Positions 5,102 through 37,943 of a stretch of DNA of 64,000 bases are shown here, one piece after another. Under the pieces are notes generated by a model that did not search any database, was not told the DNA's origin, and saw only the letters and a program-made list of their open reading frames with translations. Numbering within the stretch: the stretch's first letter is position 1; each line of letters starts with the position of its first letter. Location: positions 124,001 through 188,000 of IMG/VR virus record IMGVR_UViG_3300036715_003906. One strand, 5' to 3'. Made by a program: the position numbers and the translations under genes.

Positions 5102-5725
5102 TCACAAACCGACGAACTGGCGGGGCGTGAGGACCCCGCCCCCGACGTAGGGACCGAAGGCCGAGCGGATGCCCGTGCCGTAGCGAGGCTGCTGGAGGCC
5201 GCGGATGATGTTGACCGTGGCCTTGGCCTTCTCGATTTGCTTGTCGAACTGCTCCTGGGCGCTTCCGGCCGCGGCCTCGTACTTGCTGGCCTTGTCGATG
5301 TCGAGCGATATACCCCCGATGGAATACGAGTTGTGGGCCAGAATGCCGTTGGTGAGAACGAAGTTCTCTGGCCCCGGCACACAGAGGTCGTACATCTCCC
5401 CCGTGTGAGGCACCTCCATGACAAGAGATACCGCCGTGGCACCCGTCGAGCCGTCCTTGACGGTGGTGACCAGCGACCCTGGCGTCAACTTCAACGTCGT
5501 GATGGGGGCGAAGGGGAGGGCTGCAAACAGACTGTGATCCTCGGTCGCCACCACGGAAGCCCCGGTCTCAAGCGTGACCTGAAGGGCTCGCTTATGCGGC
5601 ACCTGATGCTTCATCACGTCCTTGATGGGGAACCACCCTGAGTGCCCAGAAGCGTCCACCGCTTGGGTCGTGAGCAACCCTTGTCGGAAGGCGTCACGAA
5701 TATCACGTCGGGTTTGCTCATCCAT
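5102..5725 (-). CDS. Fractured neck/adaptor protein, piece 3: split-intein IntC-2 (132 aa) fused to a 75-aa C-extein
   Basis: GGAGG RBS. Intein block B (ATEDHSLF), block F (MYDLCVPGPENF) and block G (ILAHN/S) are followed by extein SYSIGGISLDIDK. No block A is present. Confidence 0.85.
   Translation of the reverse strand: MDEQTRRDIRDAFRQGLLTTQAVDASGHSGWFPIKDVMKHQVPHKRALQVTLETGASVVATEDHSLFAALPFAPITTLKLTPGSLVTTVKDGSTGATAVSLVMEVPHTGEMYDLCVPGPENFVLTNGILAHNSYSIGGISLDIDKASKYEAAAGSAQEQFDKQIEKAKATVNIIRGLQQPRYGTGIRSAFGPYVGGGVLTPRQFVGL
5330..5725 (-). mobile_element. Split intein 2, C-fragment (IntC-2)
   Basis: Ends His-Asn (Asn codon 5330-5332) with Ser+1; carries TxxH block B, so the split is atypical (short N, long C). 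Confidence 0.85.
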
Positions 5726-5850
5726 GACACGCCTCCAGAATTTCGGTCACAACCGCCGCAAGGTCACCCCTGATACGGTGTTCAGGCACACGAAGCACCC
5801 GCCAACCACGATTCAACAAGTAGGTTGTCTTTTGAAACGGCACCTTCAGG
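5718..5850 (-). pseudogene. Remnant of a Vsr/DUF559-like homing endonuclease (C-terminal ~40 codons, frameshifted)
   Basis: Alternative frame reads ...KD[+1 nt]YLLNRGWRVLRVPEHRIRGDLAAVVTEILEACHG*, matching the Vsr/DUF559 C-terminal GW.VLR..EH.I motif. It is AT-richer than the flanks and lies exactly between IntN-2 and IntC-2. Confidence 0.7.
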
Positions 5851-6619
5851 GAGTCTGTGGTTCGCCATCCCCATGCACGATAGCAAAAAGCTCTGCTATG
5901 GGCATGGAAACTCGTCGGCCATCTGGCAGCCCGACCGTGACTTCGGTTTCTGGGGCCACAGAAAATTCATCAGCAACCCAGTTGATCCGGAGGGCGTTGA
6001 GCGCCCAGAACATCGCCCCGGTGAGGAGGAGCGACTTCCAGGACGGGTACTGCGTGTAGAGCTGGTCGAGGCTCTGGAAGGGCGTCATCGGAGGGTAGAG
6101 CGAGATGGTGTTCATCGACTGCTCCAGGTACTCCTTCAGCTCCTCGTCGAGCCAGATGTACCCGAAGACGCGGTTGAACTGCCGGATCGTCTCCTCGTGA
6201 GCCGGGGGCCGAAAGTGGTAGTTCCTGTCGGGACTATTACTGACGACCATCCCCGAGCGATACAGCACGAAGTTGTGCCAATCTTCCGCCGTCAGGTCGT
6301 ACATATACTGCCGAGAGGGTAGTCGCTCGACCCCCAAAACAGAGACGGCAGATTCGACCCCGGCCACGGTACTACCGGTGGCAAGCTGTTCCGTTTCGAC
6401 CTTGCTTGTGGGGGTCACAAACACACGATGCCCCCCTGTGAGCACAGAAGACCCTTGTGGGGTAGTCACCCGAAGGATCGTCTCCGGGCCAACCTCCGCA
6501 CGGTGAACGTGAACGACCCTCTTCCACTCCGCTTGCCCGAGAGGAGAGAGGGACCGAACCTTCAACGTACCCCGCTTGAAGGCTGCTCGAAGCCGATTTT
6601 GCTGGTCAAGGGTCAACAT
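5846..6619 (-). CDS. Fractured neck/adaptor protein, piece 2: IntC-1 (128 aa) + 91-aa middle extein + IntN-2 (38 aa)
   Basis: GGAGAGAG RBS before ATG 6619. Block B (TGGHRVF), F (MYDLTAEDWHNF) and G (VVSN/S), then extein SPDRNYHFRPP...WVADEF, then block-A-like SVAPETEVTVGLPDGRRVSMPIAELF. The ORF track extends it in frame to 7162 through the endonuclease remnant. Confidence 0.85.
   Translation of the reverse strand: MLTLDQQNRLRAAFKRGTLKVRSLSPLGQAEWKRVVHVHRAEVGPETILRVTTPQGSSVLTGGHRVFVTPTSKVETEQLATGSTVAGVESAVSVLGVERLPSRQYMYDLTAEDWHNFVLYRSGMVVSNSPDRNYHFRPPAHEETIRQFNRVFGYIWLDEELKEYLEQSMNTISLYPPMTPFQSLDQLYTQYPSWKSLLLTGAMFWALNALRINWVADEFSVAPETEVTVGLPDGRRVSMPIAELFAIVHGDGEPQTP
5849..5962 (-). mobile_element. 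Split intein 2, N-fragment (IntN-2, Ser1, 38 aa)
   Basis: SVAPETEVTV...MPIAELF is a block A pattern with Ser at position 1; removing it joins DEF to SYSIGG of piece 3. Confidence 0.8.
6236..6619 (-). mobile_element. Split intein 1, C-fragment (IntC-1)
   Basis: Blocks B, F and G; ends Ser-Asn (Asn codon 6236-6238) with Ser+1. Confidence 0.85.
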
Positions 6620-7162
6620 GAACGTCTCTCTCCGTCCGGACGATGAAGTCCCACCCCATGCGGGTGGCCTAGGAAGAAGCTGCCTGAAGTCGTCGTTGTA
6701 CCTTGTCGTCAGCAGGCAGCCCGAGAACCCAACTAGCTTTGACCTCGATGAGCGCCAACGTACCCGAGAGGCCCTACCCTCTGGACGTTGAGCAGCAAGA
6801 CGAAGAACCTCACGCTCTTCGGCTGAACGAATACGTCCGCGATGGAAGTCGAACGCACCAGAAGCCCAAGCATCCCGCATTCGATCCGACAACCACGGTT
6901 TCGTCCTCCCCCTACCCGCTTGTCCCACAGCAACCGCATTTGCGGTCCGGTTCGCCCGTGATGCGGCATTCCCGGTCGCTTGAGTCAACCGTTGAATGGC
7001 GGCGAGGGATAGGCCCGTCATGGCCTTCCTCCGACCCCAAGTGGCCCCTGCTGCGTGAAGCTCAGTCACCACAGCGACCCGTTTTTCCTGCACCCCTGGA
7101 GGGGGTCGCCCTGATTTGCTGAAGGATACCCACGAAATTCCGTGTTTCGCCAGCAGGGACAC
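6606..7162 (-). pseudogene. Decayed TnsA-like / PD-(D/E)XK homing endonuclease
   Basis: A basic N-terminal DNA-binding-like part is in the ORF frame. Another frame (6773 to 6606) reads GTLALIEVKASWVL...DKVQRRLQAASS*ATRMGWDFIVRTERD, i.e. the IEVK...GW.F...TE.D motif with an internal TAG. The middle of the nuclease appears deleted. Lies between IntN-1 and IntC-1. Confidence 0.7.
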
Positions 7163-7166
7163 CCGA

Positions 7167-7664
7167 TCAGGGTGTGGGTTGCAGGGCTTCCCAGAGAGCC
7201 CGGATAGAAACTACCATTTTCTCTCCGTCCACGTCAAGCTCGACCTCTTCCTCTTCCCCGAGGCAGTTGTCCCGGAGGAGCGTCCGCAGCCGGTGGATGA
7301 GGTCCACTTCGTTCGGGGTGAAGAGGAGCGGGGCCTGCGAACCCGACACCACCTGATCGATGACCTCGAACTCCTGCACCACCTGCTGGAGCTGCCCCCC
7401 GACCAGCTCCCGGAAGGACCACCGCACGCGGTAGAGCCCGAGGTTGGCGTCGAGGGGGATCACGATGCTCGCGTAGTATTCCCCGAGGGCGGGGTTCGCC
7501 GGCACGCGGGCAGGGTTCCCCACCGGGGCCTCCAGACCCGTCGTCACGTCGGCGATGGCGTAGCTGATCTCGGCGGCATTGACCGGGAGGTCCGCCGCGT
7601 TGGCCAGGTAGATGTGCAGGTCCTGGCGGCCGAGCTGCTGCCCGCGGAAGAACGCGACGCCCAT
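7167..7664 (-). CDS. Fractured neck/adaptor protein, piece 1: 133-aa N-extein (Ig/BppU-like) + IntN-1 (32 aa)
   Basis: Ends ...LRTLLRDN/CLGEEEEVELDVDGEKMVVSIRALWEAL, an intein block A starting at Cys (codon 7263-7265) with no rest of the intein in this gene. Confidence 0.85.
   Translation of the reverse strand: MGVAFFRGQQLGRQDLHIYLANAADLPVNAAEISYAIADVTTGLEAPVGNPARVPANPALGEYYASIVIPLDANLGLYRVRWSFRELVGGQLQQVVQEFEVIDQVVSGSQAPLLFTPNEVDLIHRLRTLLRDNCLGEEEEVELDVDGEKMVVSIRALWEALQPTP
7170..7265 (-). mobile_element. Split intein 1, N-fragment (IntN-1, Cys1, 32 aa)
   Basis: Block A CL.....V......SI..LW pattern; 9 acidic versus 2 basic residues. Confidence 0.8.
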
Positions 7665-8248: not shown

Positions 8249-10363
8249 CTAAGAACCCCAGCCGTAGACCCGGCAGCGCCCCACCGGGTGACAGCCGGCG
8301 CGGGCCACGGCATCCTGCACCCGGAAGAGCTGCTCCGCCGCCTCGACCCCGGAGCACGGGGTACGGCGCCAGGACCAGACCACGACCCAGGCCCCCGGCT
8401 GACCGCACTCCCCGACCACCCCCGCGACGTGGTAGCAGCCCAGATCATCCTGAACCGGGGCACGAACCGCAGGCCCGATGAGCTGGCGCGTGCCGTCCGC
8501 CCGGACCTGGTAGAGCGCGTAGGAGAGCCACACAGGGGCCACAGGAGCCCCCGTGGCGTCGGTGAGGCACAAGGCCAGGTCTCCCGGCCCGAAGATCCCG
8601 CCCCACCCGAAGGGAGGCCCGGGGCACACCGGGGGGAGAACAGGCTGAAGAGGCCGGACCACCTCGACGTTGGCGACAAGGACGCCCACCCCCACCAGGG
8701 CCTCGGGGAAGTACCCGTAGAAGAACCCGGCCCCCGCGGCGTGACCTGCAACGAAGTGGAGGACACGGGGAGCGCCGTCGAGGACACTGTCCCCCGTGAT
8801 CTGCCCCGACCCCAGGAGCGGGGGCATGGCCAGAATGCCCTCCCCGAACACGTACCCCGAGGACAGGTACAGCTCCGCCGATGTCTTGATAGCTGCGAAC
8901 CCGAAGGTCTCCGCACTGAACCCCCCCTGCCCCAGCACGATCCTCGTCGTGAACGGGACCCCCAGAGCGGCCTCGCTCGGAATCCCCACGGCCCCCGCGA
9001 TGATGTCGATGTGCGCCGCCGGAGTCCCGACCGCCTCCTCACTGGGAACCCCCACGGGCCCCAGCAAGAAGGCGAGCGTCTCCAGGCCGAAGGCTTCCGC
9101 GCGGAGAGCCCCCTGACCGAAGAAGGTCATGTCAAGACGCCCGAGGCCGAAGGCTTCCGCGCTCGTGACGCCCACAGGGAGCCCGACCCGGATGGCCAGA
9201 GGCACCCCGAACGCGGCTCCTCCGGGAATCCCCGAGGGGCCCACCACGAAGGCCGAGAACGACGACCCGAAGGTCTCCGCGCTGACCGCGCCCGTGCCCC
9301 GCACCATCAAGCGCTCGAAGCCGACCCCGAAGGCTTGCCCGCTCAGCACCCCCTGCCCGAGCGGCACGGTGACCTGAAGGGGAATCCCTACCGCAGCCGC
9401 ACTCCCGACCCCCGTCGCAACCAGGCCGAGACGGATGGCCCCGAGGCCGCTCGTGAAGGCCGAGGGGGCCCCCTGGCCAAAGACCGTGAGCTGCTCGGTC
9501 GCCTGCCCCGACGCAAAGGCCCCAGGGATACCCGTGGGGAGCAGGTTGGCCGAGACCAGGGGCGTCCCAAGGGCGAGCCCCGATGGCACCCCCGACCCCA
9601 GAAGGGTGAGGCGCTCCGTGGCTGCCCCAGAGACAAAGGTACTCGCGGCGCCTTGCCCAAGAGGGAACAGCCTCTGGGTAGCGACACCGAAGGCTTGCGC
9701 CGGTGTCGCCCCGGGCGGGGACAGGTCCCGGCCCACCACGGCCTGGCCCGAGGCAAAGGCGCTTCCGGCCCCCGACCCGAAGACGGTGAGCTGCTCCGTG
9801 GCCGCACCGGCGGTGACGGCGCTCGCCGTCCCTTGGCCGAGAGGGATGAACCTCTGGGTCGCTGCCCCGAAGGCTTGCGCCGACAGCACCCCGGAGGGGG
9901 AGGCCACACGAACCGCGGTCGCCTGGCCCGAGGCAAAGGCACTCCCGGCCCCCTGCCCCAGTGCGCTACAGACCTCGGTCGCCGTCCCGGAAACGAACCC
10001 CGAGAGGACCCCCTGGGGCCCGAGGGCGCGCACGACGGTCGGGGTGCCGGCCGCCTGGGCCGAGGGCACCCCCGTGCCGAGCACCGTGAGCCTCTCGGTT
10101 GCGGCCCCGAAGGCTCCCGCACTGGGGGCCCCGGAGACCCGAGCGAGTCGGGTCGCCGAGGGCTGCCCGAAGGCCCCTCCGCTCGGGACACCCGCCCCGA
10201 GGACCGTGAGCCTCTCGGTTGCGGTGCCGAACGACTCCCCGCCCGCGACCCCGACGGCAAGGGGGATCAGGGCCACCGCGGCCTGACCAAAGGCCACGGC
10301 CGCCGCCACGCCCCGGGCGGCGAACGTGGTCGCTTCCGACAGGTCGAAGAGTAGGCGGCTCAT
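8249..10363 (-). CDS. Gly/Ala-rich repetitive virion (fibre-like) protein with a C-terminal Ig-like, Cys-rich domain
   Basis: Many imperfect G(V/I)PS..AFG repeats. A possible internal start exists at 8827 (GGAGG RBS, MPPLLGSG). Confidence 0.6.
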   Translation of the reverse strand: MSRLLFDLSEATTFAARGVAAAVAFGQAAVALIPLAVGVAGGESFGTATERLTVLGAGVPSGGAFGQPSATRLARVSGAPSAGAFGAATERLTVLGTGVPSAQAAGTPTVVRALGPQGVLSGFVSGTATEVCSALGQGAGSAFASGQATAVRVASPSGVLSAQAFGAATQRFIPLGQGTASAVTAGAATEQLTVFGSGAGSAFASGQAVVGRDLSPPGATPAQAFGVATQRLFPLGQGAASTFVSGAATERLTLLGSGVPSGLALGTPLVSANLLPTGIPGAFASGQATEQLTVFGQGAPSAFTSGLGAIRLGLVATGVGSAAAVGIPLQVTVPLGQGVLSGQAFGVGFERLMVRGTGAVSAETFGSSFSAFVVGPSGIPGGAAFGVPLAIRVGLPVGVTSAEAFGLGRLDMTFFGQGALRAEAFGLETLAFLLGPVGVPSEEAVGTPAAHIDIIAGAVGIPSEAALGVPFTTRIVLGQGGFSAETFGFAAIKTSAELYLSSGYVFGEGILAMPPLLGSGQITGDSVLDGAPRVLHFVAGHAAGAGFFYGYFPEALVGVGVLVANVEVVRPLQPVLPPVCPGPPFGWGGIFGPGDLALCLTDATGAPVAPVWLSYALYQVRADGTRQLIGPAVRAPVQDDLGCYHVAGVVGECGQPGAWVVVWSWRRTPCSGVEAAEQLFRVQDAVARAGCHPVGRCRVYGWGS

Positions 10364-27327: not shown

Positions 27328-30093
27328 TCAGGCTCCGTTCCTCGCCATTCGCGGCGTGAGAGATGGATTATTGGTGCCCAGAGCATAAAGCCGACCCTTG
27401 TCGAGAAGGGTCTCCTGCTCCGAGGGCGTCAGGTTACGTCCGATGAGGGTGCGACAGGCCGTGACAAAGGCCGTGTCGTCGGGGTACGACGTCACGGAAC
27501 CTGCCGCGAGGACAGCACGATAGAGGCGGCTCTCGCCCGCCTGCGTGATCCGCTTGCTCGACTCCAGGAAGCGAGCCACCGCCAGTACCTCGGGGCCCGT
27601 GAGGCACCCCGCGGAACGTACAGCTTGCCATCCACCGGACTTGTAATGGATGAGGCCGAGCAGGACGTTCAGGGTACGTCCATGATCACGCCCCGTGGCG
27701 ACATGGACACGGTGCGCGAGGAGGCGCCACGAGGGATACCGGAGCGCTTCCTTGAGGAGCGTATTGTTCCGGTTCTCGTTCGGCCGAGGTCCAGGTTCGG
27801 GCTTCATCTCCTCCCGGACCTTGTCGACCGCACGTTGACGCAGGGCGTCCGCCAGCTCGTCCACGGCCTTGCTGGCCGGGTCCCCGGTGGGGGCAGGAGC
27901 GGGCTTCTTGTCCATCCCGTCGTCGAACCCCTGGCCCTGCTGTCCGGGCTGCCCCTGCTGCCCCTGGGCCGCAGGGAAGGAGGCAGCCTTGCCCATGGCG
28001 CCGGTGAGCATGACCCGGGGCCCACCCGAGAAGGCGATGCTCATCTTGCGGCCGAGGTCAGCGACCTCCTCGGGGTTCAGGATGTCCCGGAGGACGGCAC
28101 CCTCGAAGGCGGGGTTGGCGACCCACGACGCCTCGATGAACTTGACCGACCCGGGCTCGGCCAGGACGTGCCCGCACAGCTCGGCGATCTTCCGCTTGCG
28201 ACCCAGGGCATCGACGAACTCGTTGCCCTTGAAGTAGTGGATATGGTTGCAGAGCTGGGTCTCGTCGTAGGCGACGTTGCCGCAGGCCGTGCAGATCGTG
28301 AACTCGACCTGGCAGTTGGAGACCCCGAAGCCATGCACCTGATACGAGTGGTCTTCCTCGACCTCGATGTCGTGGACGAAGCCCTCGTACACGAAGGACT
28401 CGATGCGGGTGATCGGGAAGATGACCTTGTCGTCGAGTGCCCGGAGATGCGGGTGCTTTTTGCGAGAACCCTCGCGTGGGGACTTGTCGGACACCCCCAT
28501 CAACATCGCCGAAGACGATTGAGGGAAGTAGATGTTGAAGGCCGCGAGCTTGCCCGTCTCGTCGTGACGAAGTGCCTGCCCGTTCACCACGGCCTCGGCG
28601 AAAGTCACCGTTCGGCCCCCAAACACGCAGTCTGCCCACACCGGGATGCCGCCTCGTACCGCCAGCGTATGAAGCTGGCACATGAGGTCGTAGGAGGTGG
28701 TCGTACCCACCGAGTGCCCGCCGCTGTGCTTGTGACCGTCCCCGTTGAGCCAAGCCCCAAGCAAATGCGCCTGGGATTCGACTGACCACTGCATGGCCTC
28801 GGGGCTCAGACGCTTTTGGTGGGAGTACTCACCCCCATGCTGCTTGAACCAAGCGGCGATGCCCTTCCCCGAGACGTGTACCGTTGCCGTGTTACGGTCT
28901 TCACGGTCCTGTACCCAAGGGGCACAACCGGGGAACTCCTCGCGAAGAAGCCCAACAACCTCTTCAACGAAGGTCTCCTTCTCAGCCAAGGAGAAGTTGA
29001 ACTGCACCTCGGACGGCACACCCTTGCTCTTGATGAAGCTGCCTTCGGCCAGGAAGTACCCGAGGAGCCGAGCCTTGGCGGACCCTGGGTCACCGATCAC
29101 ATCAGAGTCGAGCTTCGGGAAGACCACATAGTCCCCCACTCGCAATTCGTCGGCACGAACCTTCTCGACCTTGAGGCTCTGGATCTCCGTGAGCTTCTCC
29201 TGGCGAGCCTTGTATTCGTCGAGGGAGTAGCTGCCGTTCGGGTTGAGCACACGCTTGTCATGACCCCCCTTGAACCGCTTGGTCATCCGACGAACGGGGT
29301 CAGCATCCTTCGTCGAAAGAGCCTCCCCACACCCACACCCGCAAACAGACGCCGGGCGGAGGACGAAGAACGGGTGTGTGCCTGTGGCCTCGACGGCATC
29401 CGGCACCCCCTTGACCTTGATCCGTCGCATCTGCCAGCGACCACCACGGATCTGCTGGTTCAGCACCTCGCGAGCCCTGCCCTTGTGGGTCAGAACCATC
29501 GCACCGGGTCGAACCTCTTCGATGGGGAGACGAGTGCCGTCGGCCATCGTGACGGGAGTCCCCGGGAGGAAACAGCCCATGCTGAGGGTCTTCAGCTCCC
29601 GCCGCTGGATCGAGGAGATCAGGGGGCGGAACTTCCGGGCCGTCGCGATCAGGATGTCGATGTAGATCGAGTCCCCGATGTCCCGGCTGGCGGCGTCCAG
29701 GATCTTGCCCTTGCTCAGCTCGGGGATCTGGACGTGCTCGACGTAGTTCTCCCCGCCGATGAAGGTCTTGAAGCACGCGAGGAGCAGCTTGCGCTCCCAG
29801 CAGTCGTTGTTGTTGTTGACGTACTTGGACGTCGCGGGCGTCACCAGCCAGTCGGGGTAGCGCCGGTCGACCTCGAAGCCGTCCACCATCTGACGACCGA
29901 CCGGCTCCGGGGACACCTCCGTGTCCACCGAAGCGACGATCGTGCAGTGCGTGAGCATGAACTCACTGGGGTCGTACTGGTCGAGTACGATCCGGGAGGC
30001 TTGCTTGTTCCCGTGGACCCGGAGGTTCTCCCACCCGGCCGACGAGATGTCGGGCTTGACAATGGTCGCGTTGGCAAACTTACGGAAGGCCAT
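27328..30093 (-). CDS. Prohead (capsid maturation) protease with an intein
   Basis: Head-module position; after intein removal reads ...TLSMG-CQVEFTICTACGN...LCNH...FIEASWV.NPAF.GA. Confidence 0.8.
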   Translation of the reverse strand: MAFRKFANATIVKPDISSAGWENLRVHGNKQASRIVLDQYDPSEFMLTHCTIVASVDTEVSPEPVGRQMVDGFEVDRRYPDWLVTPATSKYVNNNNDCWERKLLLACFKTFIGGENYVEHVQIPELSKGKILDAASRDIGDSIYIDILIATARKFRPLISSIQRRELKTLSMGCFLPGTPVTMADGTRLPIEEVRPGAMVLTHKGRAREVLNQQIRGGRWQMRRIKVKGVPDAVEATGTHPFFVLRPASVCGCGCGEALSTKDADPVRRMTKRFKGGHDKRVLNPNGSYSLDEYKARQEKLTEIQSLKVEKVRADELRVGDYVVFPKLDSDVIGDPGSAKARLLGYFLAEGSFIKSKGVPSEVQFNFSLAEKETFVEEVVGLLREEFPGCAPWVQDREDRNTATVHVSGKGIAAWFKQHGGEYSHQKRLSPEAMQWSVESQAHLLGAWLNGDGHKHSGGHSVGTTTSYDLMCQLHTLAVRGGIPVWADCVFGGRTVTFAEAVVNGQALRHDETGKLAAFNIYFPQSSSAMLMGVSDKSPREGSRKKHPHLRALDDKVIFPITRIESFVYEGFVHDIEVEEDHSYQVHGFGVSNCQVEFTICTACGNVAYDETQLCNHIHYFKGNEFVDALGRKRKIAELCGHVLAEPGSVKFIEASWVANPAFEGAVLRDILNPEEVADLGRKMSIAFSGGPRVMLTGAMGKAASFPAAQGQQGQPGQQGQGFDDGMDKKPAPAPTGDPASKAVDELADALRQRAVDKVREEMKPEPGPRPNENRNNTLLKEALRYPSWRLLAHRVHVATGRDHGRTLNVLLGLIHYKSGGWQAVRSAGCLTGPEVLAVARFLESSKRITQAGESRLYRAVLAAGSVTSYPDDTAFVTACRTLIGRNLTPSEQETLLDKGRLYALGTNNPSLTPRMARNGA
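28315..29574 (-). mobile_element. Intein (420 aa) with LAGLIDADG homing endonuclease
   Basis: CFLPGTPV (block A), ATGTHPF (B), LLGYFLAEG and LLGAWLNGDG (C, E), VHDIEVEEDHSY (F), VSN/C (G). Confidence 0.92.
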
Positions 30094-34568: not shown

Positions 34569-37500
34569 TTAGGCGCGGCGGGACTGGGGCGGGGGAAAGG
34601 GGACCGCCTTTGGCCGGGGCTTCGTCGAGGCAAAGCGGTTGCTGTCCTCCCCCTCGGCCGGCGGGGGGGTCAAGGTGAGACCGAGGCTCGTGGCGATCTT
34701 CTCCTTGACGTCCGACCCCTCGGCGAGCATCCGGCCCACTTCACCGTAGATGGCCCGCGTCACCTCGTTGAAGGTGGCGTCGTTGACGGTGAACATATCC
34801 TTTTCGAGCTTCTGCCGGGTGTCGTGCGGGTCGATGTTGAACATCTCCAGGATGACGTCGATCGAGACCGACCCCTTCTGGTACAGGTTGAACAGCGCGT
34901 CGAACGTGTCCTGGCTGTCCCGGAGCGGCAGGCGGGTGAAGCTGAGGGACGGGTAGAGGACCACTTCCTCGCCCCACTCGTCGAGTTCGATGAAGCCCTT
35001 GCGCCGGGCCACGGGCTTGAACAGGTACTCCTCGACGTACTCCTGCAAGATCTCCCGCAGAAACAGGTAGCGCTGGTTGATCACTTCGAGCTTGAGCCGG
35101 TCGCCCGAGTAGAGGGTCTCGCCCGAGAGAAGGCTCTCGGTCACGCCCAGGCCGGTGCGCAGGTGGCGCTCCGTGATCTCGTACTCCGAGGACAGGTCGA
35201 GGAGCCTGTCGCGGCTCCCCATCTCCTCCCAGTGCAGCTCGTAGTTGACGATGATCGAGTAGTCGGGGTCGACGAGGGCGTAGTCCACCTGATCGCGAAG
35301 GGCCTCGACGTCGTTTTCGCTGAGGTCGTCGGCCCAGATGATCCGCTTCGGGGTCATCGCCCGGCTGGCGATCTGGGTCTGCGCCTGGCGGAGCTTCTCC
35401 CGGTAGTACAGGGTGCGAAGGCAGTTGGAAGTACGCGAAAGTCCAGCGAAAAACGAGTGGTCTTCGTGGACGTTGAGGCTGTAGACCGGCCCCTCGTGCA
35501 TGGCCGTCGAGACCGATTGCACCCGGTAGAAGAGCTTCCCCTCGTGCTCGACGTGCCGTGACCCCGAGCGCCCGTCCTTCCACTCGTCAGGATCTTGCCG
35601 CTTGGCAAGGAAACCCGACTCGAAGAACGTCTTGACGGAAGGACCATGCGTAAAGTGAACGGAGTGCAAGGGCTTCGCCCAAGCCCTCTCTCCGTTCGCC
35701 TGCCTGACCCAACGTTCCTTCGTAGGCTTCGTCTTGGAGACCGGGATGCCGAGGGACGTGCAGAGCAAGAAAATCTGATCCATAAGCACATGGTTCGTAC
35801 CGTTGAACCGGACGCAGATGCTCCCGTCTTTCTTGCGGACGACATCCCCATCGGAGTCACAGAAACCTCGAAGGAGACCGAGCAAGAACCCCTTGTTGGC
35901 GTCGAAGACCCACGCGGGCAGGTGTTTGTCCTCGCTCGTGTGCCCGAAATTTGCGGCCATCCAACGCACGAGAGCGTCCTGGTAGCCGTCCATGTGGACC
36001 CCAGCCCCAGCATGGCTCTCCGACCACACGACCTTGAGCACGTCGAGCATCGGCTTGATCTGCTCTTGGATCGCCTTAACGGACGCGGGCTCGTTGGGGC
36101 CGTAGGTGAACCCGAGCGTACCGTAGTCGAGCCCCTCGTGCTTCGTGATGTGCCCGTCCCCGAGCCAGAAACCGAGGAAGTACCCGAAACCTGCAACCAG
36201 CGGGAGCACCCGCATGGGGAAGGTCTTGGTGTGGGCGGCGCTCGTCGGGGCTTTCAAGCCGGACTTGTTGGGCGGGAAGTTGAGGGTCTTGTCCTTGGCG
36301 ACCGTCACCCCGTACCCGAGCGACACGAGTTGGGACCGGATCTCCTTGAGCGTGACCGGATGAAGGCCGAAGCGTTCGCAGACTTCGGCCGAACGCATCG
36401 CCACGGGCTCCGTGAGCGTCGATGCCCATTCGAGGATGACGTTGAGGTCGTTGGTGCGACCGACCTTTCGAGGGTCCGTCTGTTCCTTCTCATACCTGAC
36501 CGTGAACGAGTGCGTCGTCCGGTCCACGACCTCCCAGCGAAGGTCTGAGGTACCTCCAGAGCGACGGGCACGGTAGTCGGCCTCGACCCCGTGCATGAAC
36601 TCCGCGAGATCGACGCCCCCAACCAACGAACCAGAAAGCGGGACCTGCGCGACCTGAAGGTAATCCCCAGCCCGGATGTCCTCCGCAGGAAGCTCGACCA
36701 CGGACCCGTCGCGAAGCACGGGGTACTTGTGGTCCTTCGTGCAGCCCACTGGCGGCTCGATCTTGGCGACGTGAAGAAGCGCGATCTCCTCCGCCACGGG
36801 ACGGACACCGACCTCGAACTCACGCCACGCCCCCGTGTGCGAAAGCACTCGATCCGTGTCGGGATCGAGATCCTCGATGTGGACTTGCCGAACCACCCCG
36901 TCCCGTTTCACGAGAACCGGGGTGCCTGCGATGTGGCAGCGGTCGAGGATGGACTGGCCCAGCTCGTCCCCCGCACCCTTCCGGGCCGAGAGCATGTGGA
37001 CGAAGGACCCCTCGTCCGGGTCGTCGCCGAGGGGGATCAGGTGCCCGTTCTCGATGTAGTCCCGGATCTCGGCAGGGATCTCCTCGACCATCTCCGACGC
37101 AATGGGGTCGCCCATCTTCGCCTGCTGGATGAGGGCCCGATCCCGGTCCGAGGGGATCAGCTCGACCCGCATCTTGTCCGAGAAGTCGAAGGTCGTGACC
37201 TTGACCTGGTCGATCGGGAAAATGATGATCCGGTCCCACCCCTTGTAGTGCTTCCGGTAGTAGGCGTCCTCCTCCTCCTCGCGGGTGTCCTTCTCCACCC
37301 TCTCGACGTCGTCGACCTCGCGGGCCCCGTGCTCGTCAACCACGCTGCGGCGGACCTTCTTGGGCTCGTAGCCGACGTCGTCAGGAAGCGGGACCTGGTG
37401 GTCCTCGGCGAAGATGGCGACGTTGCCGTCCAGCCAGTAGTGGCGGACGATGGTCGCCAGCCGCTGGAACAGCTTGACCTTCTTCGACATCTTCTGGAAG

Positions 37501-37943
37501 AAGGAGAGGATGTACTTGCCGTACTGCTCGGGGCTCGTGAAGCCCTCGGGGTGCGAGATGGGCTTCGGGGCCGCCAGTCGCACCTTCGACAACGGCAGCT
37601 CCGTGTGCAGGTCGATCGACTGCGCGACGATGGGCTCGGAGTTGTAGAAGTGCCGGTAGATCTCCCGCTTCTCGCGGAGAGACTGCGGCAGCTCCAGGAA
37701 GTCGGTCGAGAGCTGGGGGGAGAAGAAGGACCCGTTCTGGGCCAGACTCGTGTAGCCGCCCATGCCCCCGGCGTAGTTCGCCGTGCGGGTGTTCCCTGCC
37801 AGACCCTCGCGGCGAGCCCGACGCTCCAGGGGGGTCAGGGGCATCATCTGCACAGGGGACGCCACCCGGGGGTGGTTCCGACGCATGTGGGGGTCGAGGG
37901 CAGCCTGAACGGGCCGGGCCGAGGTGTAAGGGCGTGGGGGCAT
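34569..37943 (-). CDS. Portal protein with an intein
   Basis: Downstream of TerL; R...RHFY...PIV...IDL..ELPLS and YW..GN motifs; C-terminal L.F..L.L.D. GAGGAG RBS. Confidence 0.85.
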   Translation of the reverse strand: MPPRPYTSARPVQAALDPHMRRNHPRVASPVQMMPLTPLERRARREGLAGNTRTANYAGGMGGYTSLAQNGSFFSPQLSTDFLELPQSLREKREIYRHFYNSEPIVAQSIDLHTELPLSKVRLAAPKPISHPEGFTSPEQYGKYILSFFQKMSKKVKLFQRLATIVRHYWLDGNVAIFAEDHQVPLPDDVGYEPKKVRRSVVDEHGAREVDDVERVEKDTREEEEDAYYRKHYKGWDRIIIFPIDQVKVTTFDFSDKMRVELIPSDRDRALIQQAKMGDPIASEMVEEIPAEIRDYIENGHLIPLGDDPDEGSFVHMLSARKGAGDELGQSILDRCHIAGTPVLVKRDGVVRQVHIEDLDPDTDRVLSHTGAWREFEVGVRPVAEEIALLHVAKIEPPVGCTKDHKYPVLRDGSVVELPAEDIRAGDYLQVAQVPLSGSLVGGVDLAEFMHGVEADYRARRSGGTSDLRWEVVDRTTHSFTVRYEKEQTDPRKVGRTNDLNVILEWASTLTEPVAMRSAEVCERFGLHPVTLKEIRSQLVSLGYGVTVAKDKTLNFPPNKSGLKAPTSAAHTKTFPMRVLPLVAGFGYFLGFWLGDGHITKHEGLDYGTLGFTYGPNEPASVKAIQEQIKPMLDVLKVVWSESHAGAGVHMDGYQDALVRWMAANFGHTSEDKHLPAWVFDANKGFLLGLLRGFCDSDGDVVRKKDGSICVRFNGTNHVLMDQIFLLCTSLGIPVSKTKPTKERWVRQANGERAWAKPLHSVHFTHGPSVKTFFESGFLAKRQDPDEWKDGRSGSRHVEHEGKLFYRVQSVSTAMHEGPVYSLNVHEDHSFFAGLSRTSNCLRTLYYREKLRQAQTQIASRAMTPKRIIWADDLSENDVEALRDQVDYALVDPDYSIIVNYELHWEEMGSRDRLLDLSSEYEITERHLRTGLGVTESLLSGETLYSGDRLKLEVINQRYLFLREILQEYVEEYLFKPVARRKGFIELDEWGEEVVLYPSLSFTRLPLRDSQDTFDALFNLYQKGSVSIDVILEMFNIDPHDTRQKLEKDMFTVNDATFNEVTRAIYGEVGRMLAEGSDVKEKIATSLGLTLTPPPAEGEDSNRFASTKPRPKAVPFPPPQSRRA
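35424..36938 (-). mobile_element. Intein (505 aa) with LAGLIDADG homing endonuclease
   Basis: CHIAGTPV (A), CTKDHKY (B), FLGFWLGDG and LLRGFCDSDG (C, E), VYSLNVHEDHSF (F), TSN/C (G). Confidence 0.92.

What the first reader, a model, noticed from the sequence alone, without database searches (positions are those of the whole stretch)
5330..5962. Naturally split intein with Ser at both position 1 and +1 and a 38-residue IntN
Seen: IntN-2 starts SVAPETEV and has no Cys; IntC-2 ends HN/S and has a single Cys, in block F (YDLCVP). Known: Cys-independent split inteins are rare and valued for oxidising conditions (e.g. Aes123 PolB1), and short IntN fragments are chemically synthesisable. Inference: a candidate redox-tolerant labelling tool.
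Basis: partly seen in the sequence, partly recalled or inferred. Interest (0 to 1): 0.65.

Follow-up and report, generated by a model that had tools for sequence, protein, structure and literature searches.

The report
Cysteine-independent short-IntN split intein, huge phage
A structural gene of a huge phage is cut into three pieces by two split inteins, and the second one is a genuine, conserved, naturally split intein that uses serine instead of cysteine and has only a 38-residue N-part, a type of which protein chemists so far know a single natural example.

Summary
On the minus strand, IntN-2 (38 aa, 5849-5962, starts with Ser, no Cys) ends ORF-B. IntC-2 (132 aa, 5330-5725, ends HN, one Cys) starts ORF-C and is followed by Ser+1.

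The host is a roughly 300-aa virion-module protein, annotated head-tail connector in phage Tunturi_5, in a 251-kb IMG/VR record.

This is one member of a large unreported family. The site exists as an empty allele, as a contiguous mini-intein and as a split form. All intein-bearing alleles examined have Ser1, and +1 is Ser or Thr, never Cys. Block B T/H, block F Asp, the terminal HN and the Ser1-specific NX-motif His are invariant or nearly so. The block-F Cys is Ser in two thirds of relatives.

Relatives carry an intact 313-aa Vsr/DUF559-like homing endonuclease gene between the halves. Here it is reduced to a 150-bp remnant. The predicted IntN/IntC complex scores 0.91, against 0.02 for the best of 3 controls.

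Verdict: a real, very probably active, atypically split class-1 oxyester intein in a "fractured gene". It is a new member of a known kind. Splicing itself is untested.

The parts
7266..7664 (-). N-extein (133 aa) of the fractured connector-like gene (ORF-A 7167..7664)
   Evidence: 67% identical to residues 1-133 of the intein-free homologue P0135; coordinates.
7170..7265 (-). IntN-1 (32 aa, starts CLGEEEEV), the short N-part of the first, Cys1 split intein
   Evidence: The junction ...LLRDN|C is fixed by the intein-free alleles ...LLRDN-NPDRNYHF (A1 consensus) and by Tunturi_5.
6620..7162 (-). Remnant (181 codons) of the free-standing endonuclease gene of intein-1, in frame with IntC-1
   Evidence: 42% identity (E 8e-29) to the N-terminal 120 aa of a 347-aa ORF of LR745208.1. 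That ORF carries a TnsA-like nuclease domain (PF08722, E 1e-9) which is missing here.
6236..6619 (-). IntC-1 (128 aa, MLTLDQQ...VVSN), followed by Ser+1
   Evidence: Pfam Intein_splicing E 1.6e-5; 32% identical to IntC-2; GGAG-rich stretch upstream of its ATG.
5963..6235 (-). Middle extein (91 aa, SPDRNYHF...WVADEF)
   Evidence: 81% identical to residues 129-226 of P0135; tblastn hits to LR745208.1 and to the Tunturi_5 head-tail connector.
5849..5962 (-). IntN-2 (38 aa, block A/N1, Ser1 codon at 5960-5962, no Cys); stop codon at 5846-5848
   Evidence: Ser1 is present in all 20 split and all 14 contiguous relatives. Residues 1-30 make the predicted contacts.
5718..5868 (-). Remnant of the Vsr/DUF559-like homing endonuclease gene. 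About 13 codons of the 5' end (from the ATG at 5866-5868) are joined near 5831/5832 to the last ~37 codons in another frame. The stop at 5718-5720 overlaps the IntC-2 start (ATGGATGA).
   Evidence: Pfam DUF559 E 8.9e-4 for the 41-codon ORF. Both ends align to the intact 313-aa gene of relative L007 (2067-3008), which implies an internal deletion of about 790 bp. The intact gene also lies between the halves in L009 and on the P0008 contig.
5732..5736 (-). GGAGG ribosome-binding site six bases upstream of the IntC-2 ATG
   Evidence: Read directly from the sequence.
5330..5725 (-). IntC-2 (132 aa). Key residues and codons: NX-motif K39-H40 (H40 codon 5606-5608), block B T61/H64 (5543-5545, 5534-5536), block F D113 (5387-5389), non-conserved C115 (5381-5383), H131-N132 (5330-5335).
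   Evidence: invariant H40, D63, H64, D113, H131, N132. Profile against solved inteins, E 2e-15.
5105..5329 (-). C-extein (75 aa, SYSIGG...), Ser+1 codon at 5327-5329; stop at 5102-5104
   Evidence: 77% identical to residues 213-299 of P0135. Position +1 is Ser in 108 and Thr in 13 of 121 sequences.

Best explanation
This is a functional, naturally and atypically split class-1 intein that uses oxyester chemistry (Ser1/Ser+1). It sits in a 'fractured' virion gene of a huge phage.

The gene is expressed as three polypeptides:
- ORF-A: N-extein plus IntN-1.
- ORF-B: IntC-1, middle extein and IntN-2.
- ORF-C: IntC-2 plus C-extein.

The proposed steps are as follows.
1. The 38-residue IntN-2 tail of ORF-B, which supplies only motif N1 (block A), docks onto the 132-residue IntC-2. 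IntC-2 carries motifs NX, N3 (block B), F and G, so docking completes the HINT fold.
2. Ser1 attacks the Phe(-1) carbonyl in an N-to-O acyl shift, helped by T61/H64 and by the Ser1-specific NX histidine H40.
3. Ser+1 takes over the acyl group by transesterification.
4. Asn132 cyclises, helped by H131, which releases the intein.
5. An O-to-N shift leaves ...WVADEF-SYSIGG....

Together with the first split intein (Cys1/Ser+1), this rebuilds a 299-aa protein equivalent to the intein-free alleles.

The split arose when a free-standing Vsr/DUF559-like homing endonuclease gene inserted between motifs N1 and NX. In this phage that gene has since been deleted down to a remnant.

Shown here: the anatomy, the junctions, the conservation, the endonuclease remnant and the predicted docking. 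Inferred: the chemistry and the in vivo splicing.
For: Junctions:
- Intein-free alleles read DEF|(D/S/N/G)YSIGG.
- The predicted ligation product DEF-SYSIGG exists as a natural contiguous protein in 12 alleles.

Three allele states occur at one site among the best 120 N-side hits:
- 85 empty alleles.
- 14 contiguous mini-inteins of 159-191 aa.
- 20 split forms with IntN of 31-43 aa.
- All 34 intein-bearing alleles start with Ser.

C side:
- 567 hits at E <= 1e-3.
- In 121 aligned sequences (38-81% identical over the intein in the 60 of them re-aligned), H40, D63, H64, D113, H131 and N132 are invariant and T61 is present in 119.
- Position +1 is Ser in 108 and Thr in 13.

NX motif:
- H40 is invariant and is preceded by R/K in 82 of 121 sequences.
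- It aligns with the RH of the Ser1 Mja TFIIB intein.
- It matches the signature Pasch et al. describe for Ser1 inteins (PMC10189870).
- In the Cys1 intein-1 of the same gene this position is Ala.

Selection:
- dN/dS against relative L007 is 0.19 for IntN-2 and 0.15 for IntC-2, against 0.25-0.33 for the exteins.

Docking:
- Complex prediction scores 0.91, with the best of 3 controls at 0.02. That mark was reached by 51 of 78 solved complexes and 2 of 108 mismatched pairs.
- The runs agree in at least 97% of contacts, and the partner's pLDDT is at least 83.

Expression signals and copy number:
- IntC-2 has its own GGAGG and ATG, and its start overlaps the stop of the endonuclease remnant.
- No second copy of the host gene is found in the 251-kb record.
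Against: - No biochemical or proteomic evidence of splicing exists, and no RNA run holds the locus.
- dS is near saturation (0.9-1.8), so the dN/dS values are rough.
- The record is only about 53% complete by CheckV, so an intact second copy elsewhere cannot be excluded.
- The complex model may score high because inteins are well represented among solved structures. It shows likeness, not binding.
- Pfam's intein model matches below its gathering score (32 bits against 35.8).
- Block F position 13 is Glu rather than the usual His. The Mja TFIIB Ser1 intein also has ENF there.
Confidence: 0.82

Rival explanations
1. The locus is a dead relic. The split halves no longer splice, and the fractured gene is a pseudogene whose function is supplied by another copy or is dispensable.
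For: Both associated endonuclease genes are decayed. The record is about 53% complete, so another copy could lie outside it.
Against: All catalytic residues are intact, and they are invariant across relatives as little as 38% identical over the intein. dN/dS of the intein halves is 0.15-0.19. All three ORFs are open, with start signals. Hundreds of phages keep the same split arrangement. Decay of the endonuclease gene after fixation is the expected course of the homing cycle and says nothing about splicing.
Confidence: 0.07
2. The halves associate but do not ligate. The three polypeptides are held together non-covalently by the intein halves and work as a complex.
For: The predicted association is strong. 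Nothing here measures peptide-bond formation.
Against: Association alone would not need Ser1, H40, T61/H64, D113, H131, N132 and Ser/Thr+1 to be invariant or nearly so. About 170 aa of intein would remain lodged at a site that is among the most conserved of the host protein.
Confidence: 0.05
3. The block-F Cys is the real nucleophile, as in class 3 inteins, and Ser1 is incidental.
For: It is the only Cys in the intein and lies in block F.
Against: - It sits at F:6, not F:4. F:4 is an invariant Asp, as in class 1 inteins.
- The position is Ser in 81, Cys in 37, Ala in 2 and Glu in 1 of 121 sequences.
- Ser1 is present in 34 of 34 intein-bearing alleles.
- G:5 is an invariant Ala, not the Thr of the class 3 WCT triplet. 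The WCT definition is from my own knowledge of Tori et al. 2010 and was not re-read here.
Confidence: 0.02
4. The split is an assembly or sequencing artefact in what is really a contiguous mini-intein.
For: Contiguous alleles of the same intein exist (P0009, P0134 and others). IntN-2 and IntC-2 happen to lie in the same frame across the 120-nt spacer.
Against: The spacer holds three in-frame stops and recognisable 5' and 3' ends of the endonuclease gene. Contigs of three runs from three studies bridge it with zero differences. Relatives show the same stop, endonuclease gene and restart layout.
Confidence: 0.02

Closest known systems
PolB16 OarG split intein (Pasch et al. 2023, PMC10189870; PDB 8cpn/8cpo)
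   Same: Naturally and atypically split, with Ser1 and Ser+1, class-1 motifs, the NX-motif histidine, and non-essential Cys residues only at non-conserved positions (one of its two is also in block F). [quoted passage not shown]
   Different: - The host gene is a PolB-type DNA polymerase from a sheep-gut metagenome, whereas here it is a virion-module protein of a huge phage from mats and sediments.
- IntN/IntC are 15/168 aa there and 38/132 aa here.
- The sequence relation is only distant: family profile E 1e-3, against 2e-15 to 1e-14 for the CDC21-1, PI-PkoII and TFIIB inteins.
- Its block-B His is dispensable, whereas here H64 is invariant.
Fractured genes with free-standing Vsr-like homing endonuclease genes (Dassa et al. 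2009, PMC2677866)
   Same: [quoted passage not shown] That paper's 'Terminase' locus is likewise split after motif N1, with a 122-aa C part.
   Different: - Those loci are DNA synthesis and repair enzymes with Cys1 inteins, mostly split at the canonical site (IntN 88-105 aa).
- Here the host is a structural gene.
- The gene is fractured twice.
- The second intein is Ser1/Ser+1.
- In this genome both endonuclease genes have decayed.
Cys1 atypically split inteins (AceL-TerL, GOS-TerL, the VidaL inteins, the consensus 'Cat' intein; PDB 6dsl)
   Same: Short IntN (15-37 aa in nature) that carries only motif N1, and a long IntC. They are found in phage-like metagenomic DNA.
   Different: They depend on a catalytic Cys at position 1 or +1 (from my own recollection of Thiel 2014 and Bachmann 2015, not re-read here). 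The sequence relation is weak: CatC scores E 5.7e-3 against the family profile.
Aes123 PolB1-derived CL/CLm and LCGC14 cysteine-less split inteins
   Same: Ser1 with Ser+1 (CL also accepts Thr+1), the NX motif, and use under oxidising conditions.
   Different: They are canonically split in nature (IntN 115-120 aa). The short 26-aa IntN of CL is an artificial split. Their hosts are PolB genes.
Ser1 archaeal mini- and maxi-inteins (Mja TFIIB, PI-PkoII)
   Same: They are among the best sequence matches to solved structures, E 1e-14 and 6e-15. TFIIB shows the same RH/KH NX motif and ENF in block F.
   Different: They are contiguous cis-splicing inteins of archaeal informational genes, and they are not split.

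Membership tests
Class 1 intein (HINT domain) | Nucleophile at intein position 1 within a block A/N1 motif | tested here: met
   S-V-A-P-E-T-E-V fits the pattern C/S-hydrophobic-x-x-x-T-x-V. Ser1 is present in 34 of 34 intein-bearing alleles.
Class 1 intein (HINT domain) | Block B/N3 TxxH | tested here: met
   The motif is T61-E-D-H64. T is present in 119 of 121 sequences and H in 121 of 121.
Class 1 intein (HINT domain) | Block F Asp (F:4), and block G ending His-Asn followed by Cys/Ser/Thr at +1 | tested here: met
   D113, H131 and N132 are invariant. Position +1 is Ser in 108 and Thr in 13 sequences.
Class 1 intein (HINT domain) | Insertion is precisely delimited when compared with intein-free homologues | tested here: met
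   85 empty alleles, plus LR745208.1 and Tunturi_5 gp319.
Class 1 intein (HINT domain) | Autocatalytic protein splicing | not testable with these tools
   This needs an in vitro or in vivo assay.
Naturally split (trans-splicing) intein | The halves are encoded by separate ORFs, with a stop after IntN and an independent start for IntC | tested here: met
   TGA at 5846-5848; GGAGG plus ATG at 5723-5736; three in-frame stops in the spacer. The layout is confirmed in contigs of 3 runs.
Naturally split (trans-splicing) intein | The halves associate into one HINT fold | tested here: met
   In silico only. Complex prediction scores 0.91 against 0.02 for the best of 3 controls. That mark was reached by 51 of 78 solved and 2 of 108 mismatched pairs.
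Atypically split intein | The split lies between motif N1 and the remaining motifs, giving a short IntN (15-37 aa in published natural examples) | tested here: met
   IntN-2 carries only N1, and IntC-2 carries NX, N3, F and G. The length of 38 aa is one over the published range, and relatives have 31-43 aa.
Cysteine-independent (Ser1/Ser+1) inteins | NX-motif histidine preceded by Arg or Lys | tested here: met
   The motif is K39-H40. H is present in 121 of 121 sequences, and the preceding residue is R/K in 82 and Q in 35. It aligns to the RH of the Mja TFIIB intein.
Cysteine-independent (Ser1/Ser+1) inteins | No Cys at all in the intein (strictly cysteine-less) | tested here: not met
   There is one Cys (C115, F:6). 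The position is Ser in 81 of 121 relatives, so it is probably replaceable. 16 of 121 IntC and 10 of 20 IntN relatives are Cys-free.
Fractured gene (Dassa 2009) | A free-standing homing endonuclease gene lies between the intein halves | tested here: inconclusive
   Only a remnant of about 150 bp is present here. An intact 313-317-aa DUF559/Vsr-like ORF is present in relatives. This is an ex-member that has lost its endonuclease.
Class 3 intein | Cys at F:4 as nucleophile with the Trp/Cys/Thr triplet, and no need for a position-1 nucleophile | tested here: not met
   F:4 is an invariant Asp, the Cys is at F:6 and is not conserved, and G:5 is Ala.
PolB16 OarG intein allele | Same host gene and insertion point, and close sequence similarity | tested here: not met
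   The host and the site differ, and the family profile scores only E 1e-3 against 8cpn.

The most novel reading that the evidence does not exclude
This locus samples a large natural reservoir of atypically split Ser1/Ser(Thr)+1 inteins, with well over a hundred 90%-identity clusters. They must act within the time window of virion assembly. Some members may therefore be fast, fully cysteine-free, semi-synthesis-ready split inteins with a synthetic IntN of about 30 aa, which the field currently says it lacks.

In addition, the gene is naturally assembled from three pieces by two related (32% identical) atypically split inteins, one Cys1/Ser+1 and one Ser1/Ser+1. These two must be orthogonal in vivo. 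If so, the locus is a ready-made natural pair for three-segment ligation.
Probability: 0.3. Interest if true: 0.75.

Novelty: new member of a known kind. Interest (0 to 1): 0.6.

Why it matters
Cysteine-independent split inteins work under oxidising conditions and leave thiol chemistry free for labelling. A short IntN can be made by peptide synthesis.

A 2026 paper from the leading laboratory states that only one natural intein combines both traits (PolB16 OarG, which is slow and prone to side reactions). [quoted passage not shown]

This locus, and the family it reveals, supplies many such candidates, some with no cysteine at all, along with natural contiguous and empty alleles for comparison.

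Biologically, it extends the fractured-gene arrangement from replication enzymes to a virion-module gene of huge phages. It also shows within one family four stages of the homing cycle: the empty site, the mini-intein, the split form with an endonuclease gene, and the split form with a decayed endonuclease gene.

Tried and rejected
- **Family scans of the extein:** Pfam and PHROGs scans of the extein pieces and of the intein-free homologue P0135 gave no family.
- **Fold of the host protein:** An AlphaFold2 model of P0135 (mean pLDDT 70) gave no informative PDB match. There were only generic beta-sandwich hits and one weak portal-adaptor hit at rank 22. In BFVD it matched only uncharacterised phage proteins, the best named being Bacillus phage G gp165. 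The 'head-tail connector' label therefore rests on the Tunturi_5 annotation alone.
- **Closest relative:** DNA of the P0008 contig (81% identical) could not be fetched. dN/dS therefore used the more distant L007 and is near saturation.
- **RNA evidence:** No RNA run holds the locus.
- **Literature:** Searches for a prior description of this intein family or host found none in the held library. This does not prove that no description exists.
- **Class 3 mechanism:** Considered and rejected.
- **Read-through of the spacer:** Considered and rejected, because the spacer has three in-frame stops.
- **Assembly artefact:** Considered and rejected.
- **Steps not taken:** All pieces were searched separately by reference. 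The large HMMER search was not used because relatives were plentiful.
Full report
**1. What is in the sequence**

The window is bases 124001-188000 of a 251,474-bp IMG/VR virus record. GC is about 67%, and CheckV estimates about 53% completeness.

On the minus strand, three consecutive ORFs carry one gene in pieces:

- ORF-A (7167..7664) is a 133-aa N-extein followed by a 32-aa IntN-1 that starts with Cys.
- ORF-B (5846..7162) has four parts in order:
  - 181 codons of unrelated sequence;
  - IntC-1 (128 aa, ends VVSN);
  - a 91-aa middle extein (SPDRNYHF...WVADEF);
  - IntN-2 (38 aa, 5849-5962, SVAPETEV..., no Cys), then a TGA stop.
- ORF-C (5102..5725) comes after a 120-nt spacer. It starts with its own ATG, six bases after a GGAGG. 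It has two parts:
  - IntC-2 (132 aa, 5330-5725, ends ILAHN; its only Cys is residue 115, in YDLCVP);
  - a 75-aa C-extein that begins with Ser (5327-5329).

**2. Are the junctions right?**

Intein-free relatives settle this.

- Tunturiibacter phage Tunturi_5 gp319, annotated 'head-tail connector protein', is contiguous across both sites.
- The uncultured 485-kb phage LR745208.1 has intein-1 but reads ...VHEEF|DYSIGGISL... at site 2.
- Among the best 120 database relatives of the middle extein, 85 are empty alleles reading W(I/V)ADEF followed by D (67), S (12), N (4) or G (2), then YSIGG.

The insertion is therefore exactly S1...N132 with Ser+1. The predicted ligation product (...DEF-SYSIGG...) occurs as a natural uninterrupted protein.

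The three extein pieces together cover the 299-aa empty allele P0135 from residue 1 to 299, at 67-81% identity. The record holds no second copy. The pieces were searched one by one, by reference.

**3. It is one of a large family**

The C piece has 567 relatives at E <= 1e-3. Of the best 120, nearly all are 204-237-aa proteins that start within five residues of our Met1, that is, split C pieces.

On the N side, among the best 120 hits:

- 20 are split N pieces, with IntN of 31-43 aa.
- 14 carry a contiguous mini-intein of 159-191 aa at the same site.

All 34 intein-bearing alleles start with Ser.

In 121 aligned C pieces (38-81% identical over the intein in the 60 re-aligned), the pattern is as follows:

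- H40, D63, H64, D113, H131 and N132 are invariant.
- T61 is present in 119.
- Position +1 is Ser (108) or Thr (13), never Cys.
- That Cys sits at F:6, while F:4 is the class-1 Asp. This, together with Ala at G:5, excludes a class-3 mechanism.

dN/dS against relative L007 is 0.19 for IntN-2 and 0.15 for IntC-2, against 0.25-0.33 for the exteins. dS is near saturation.

**4. Signature of oxyester inteins**

Pasch et al. (PMC10189870) describe an 'NX' histidine. It is preceded by Arg or Lys and is conserved only in Ser1/Ser(Thr)+1 inteins.

- IntC-2 has K39-H40. The His is invariant in the family.
- It aligns with the RH of the Ser1 Mja TFIIB intein.
- In the related Cys1 intein-1 of the same gene (32% identical, E 2e-14), the aligned residue is Ala.
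- A profile of the family matches solved inteins. The best matches are CDC21-1 (2e-15), PI-PkoII (6e-15) and Mja TFIIB (1e-14).
- PolB16 (1e-3) and the consensus atypical intein CatC (5.7e-3) are only distant matches.

**5. Do the halves fit?**

Complex prediction with IntC-2 and IntN-2 scored 0.91, and the best of 3 controls scored 0.02.

- That mark was reached by 51 of 78 solved complexes and 2 of 108 mismatched pairs.
- The runs agree in at least 97% of contacts, and the partner's pLDDT is at least 83.
- The contacts use IntN residues 1-30 and, on IntC, residues 36-40, H64, 110-114 and 122-126.
- The last eight IntN residues are not used, which fits the 31-35-aa IntN of most relatives.

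This supports docking but does not prove it. Inteins are well represented among solved structures.

**6. How the gene was split**

In relatives L007 and L009, and on the contig of the closest relative P0008, a 313-317-aa free-standing ORF lies between IntN-2 and IntC-2. It has a DUF559/Vsr-like nuclease domain, and its stop overlaps the IntC start.

In the window, only its first ~13 codons (ATG at 5866-5868) and its last ~37 codons survive.

- The two ends are joined near 5831/5832, in different frames.
- This implies a deletion of about 790 bp.
- Contigs of three runs from three studies (microbial mat and sediment metagenomes) bridge this spacer with zero differences.

Intein-1 has the same history with a different nuclease. 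LR745208.1 has a 347-aa TnsA-like ORF there. The window keeps only a homologue of its N-terminal 120 aa, fused in frame to IntC-1.

This is the 'fractured gene' arrangement of Dassa et al. 2009 (PMC2677866). The differences here are that the host is a structural gene, that it is fractured twice, and that both endonuclease genes have decayed.

**7. Comparison with what is known, and novelty**

Humberg et al. 2026 (PMC13014065) state three relevant points:

- Natural atypically split inteins have IntN of 15-37 aa.
[quoted passage not shown] The present intein is of that kind but is not a relative of PolB16. The host, the insertion site and the sequence family all differ.

I found no description of this family in the held literature. 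I rate it a new member, in effect a new allele family, of a known kind. It has practical interest for protein semi-synthesis.

It is not strictly cysteine-less, because of C115. The family shows that this position tolerates Ser, and 16 of 121 IntC and 10 of 20 IntN relatives have no Cys at all.

**8. Limits**

- Splicing itself is inferred.
- The function of the host protein rests on one deposited annotation. Pfam, PHROGs and fold searches gave nothing specific.
- The genome is incomplete.

Noticed in passing
window 6236-7265 (-): The first intein of the same gene is also atypically split. IntN-1 is 32 aa with Cys1, and IntC-1 is 128 aa ending Ser-Asn (no penultimate His) with Ser+1. It is 32% identical to intein-2. 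The two must avoid cross-splicing, since a cross-reaction would skip the middle extein.
   Followed up: partly
window 6620-7162 (-): 181 codons homologous to the N-terminal part of a TnsA-like free-standing endonuclease of LR745208.1 lie in frame upstream of IntC-1, with no stop between. It is unclear whether IntC-1 is made with this extension or from its internal ATG at 6617-6619, which has a GGAG-rich stretch upstream.
   Followed up: partly
window 27328-30093 (-) and 34569-37943 (-): Two further, apparently contiguous inteins lie in large ORFs. One has a Hint/Hom_end_hint match at about residues 174-588 of a 921-aa ORF. The other has a LAGLIDADG-containing intein match at about residues 399-833 of a 1124-aa ORF. 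The host proteins have no Pfam family.
   Followed up: no
window 6189-6223 and 6232/7350 (reads of runs X1, X2, X4): Contigs in the same metagenomes run from the conserved PDRNYHF region into sequence that encodes ...LLRDN-NPDR.... One contig joins 6232 to 7350. Related phages with an empty intein-1 site therefore co-occur with this one, which gives a population in which homing could operate.
   Followed up: partly
window 5726-5845 (-): IntN-2 and IntC-2 are in the same reading frame across the 120-nt spacer, separated by three in-frame stops. This is probably coincidence after the endonuclease deletion.
   Followed up: yes
window 8249-10363 (-): A 704-aa ORF two genes upstream (a small unannotated ORF lies between) is built of degenerate Gly/Ala/Ser-rich repeats (PHROG 'minor tail protein', E 1e-19). 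Its C-terminal part is weakly similar (27% identity, E 2e-6) to the N-terminal beta-sandwich domain of the connector-like protein.
   Followed up: no
model of P0135, equivalent to window sites 7265/7266 and 5962/5963: Both inteins sit in the most conserved sequence blocks of the host protein (RDN-NPDRNYHFRPP and WIADEF-DYSIGG). These are also the segments AlphaFold2 predicts with the lowest confidence in the monomer, so they may be oligomer-interface loops.
   Followed up: no
L006 3124-4557; L007 3663-5141; L009 2501-3859: In relatives the gene just downstream of the connector-like gene is a 450-490-aa DUF7487 protein. In LR745208.1 it appears to have a Vsr-like C-terminus. It may be another mobile nuclease at this locus.
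   Followed up: no
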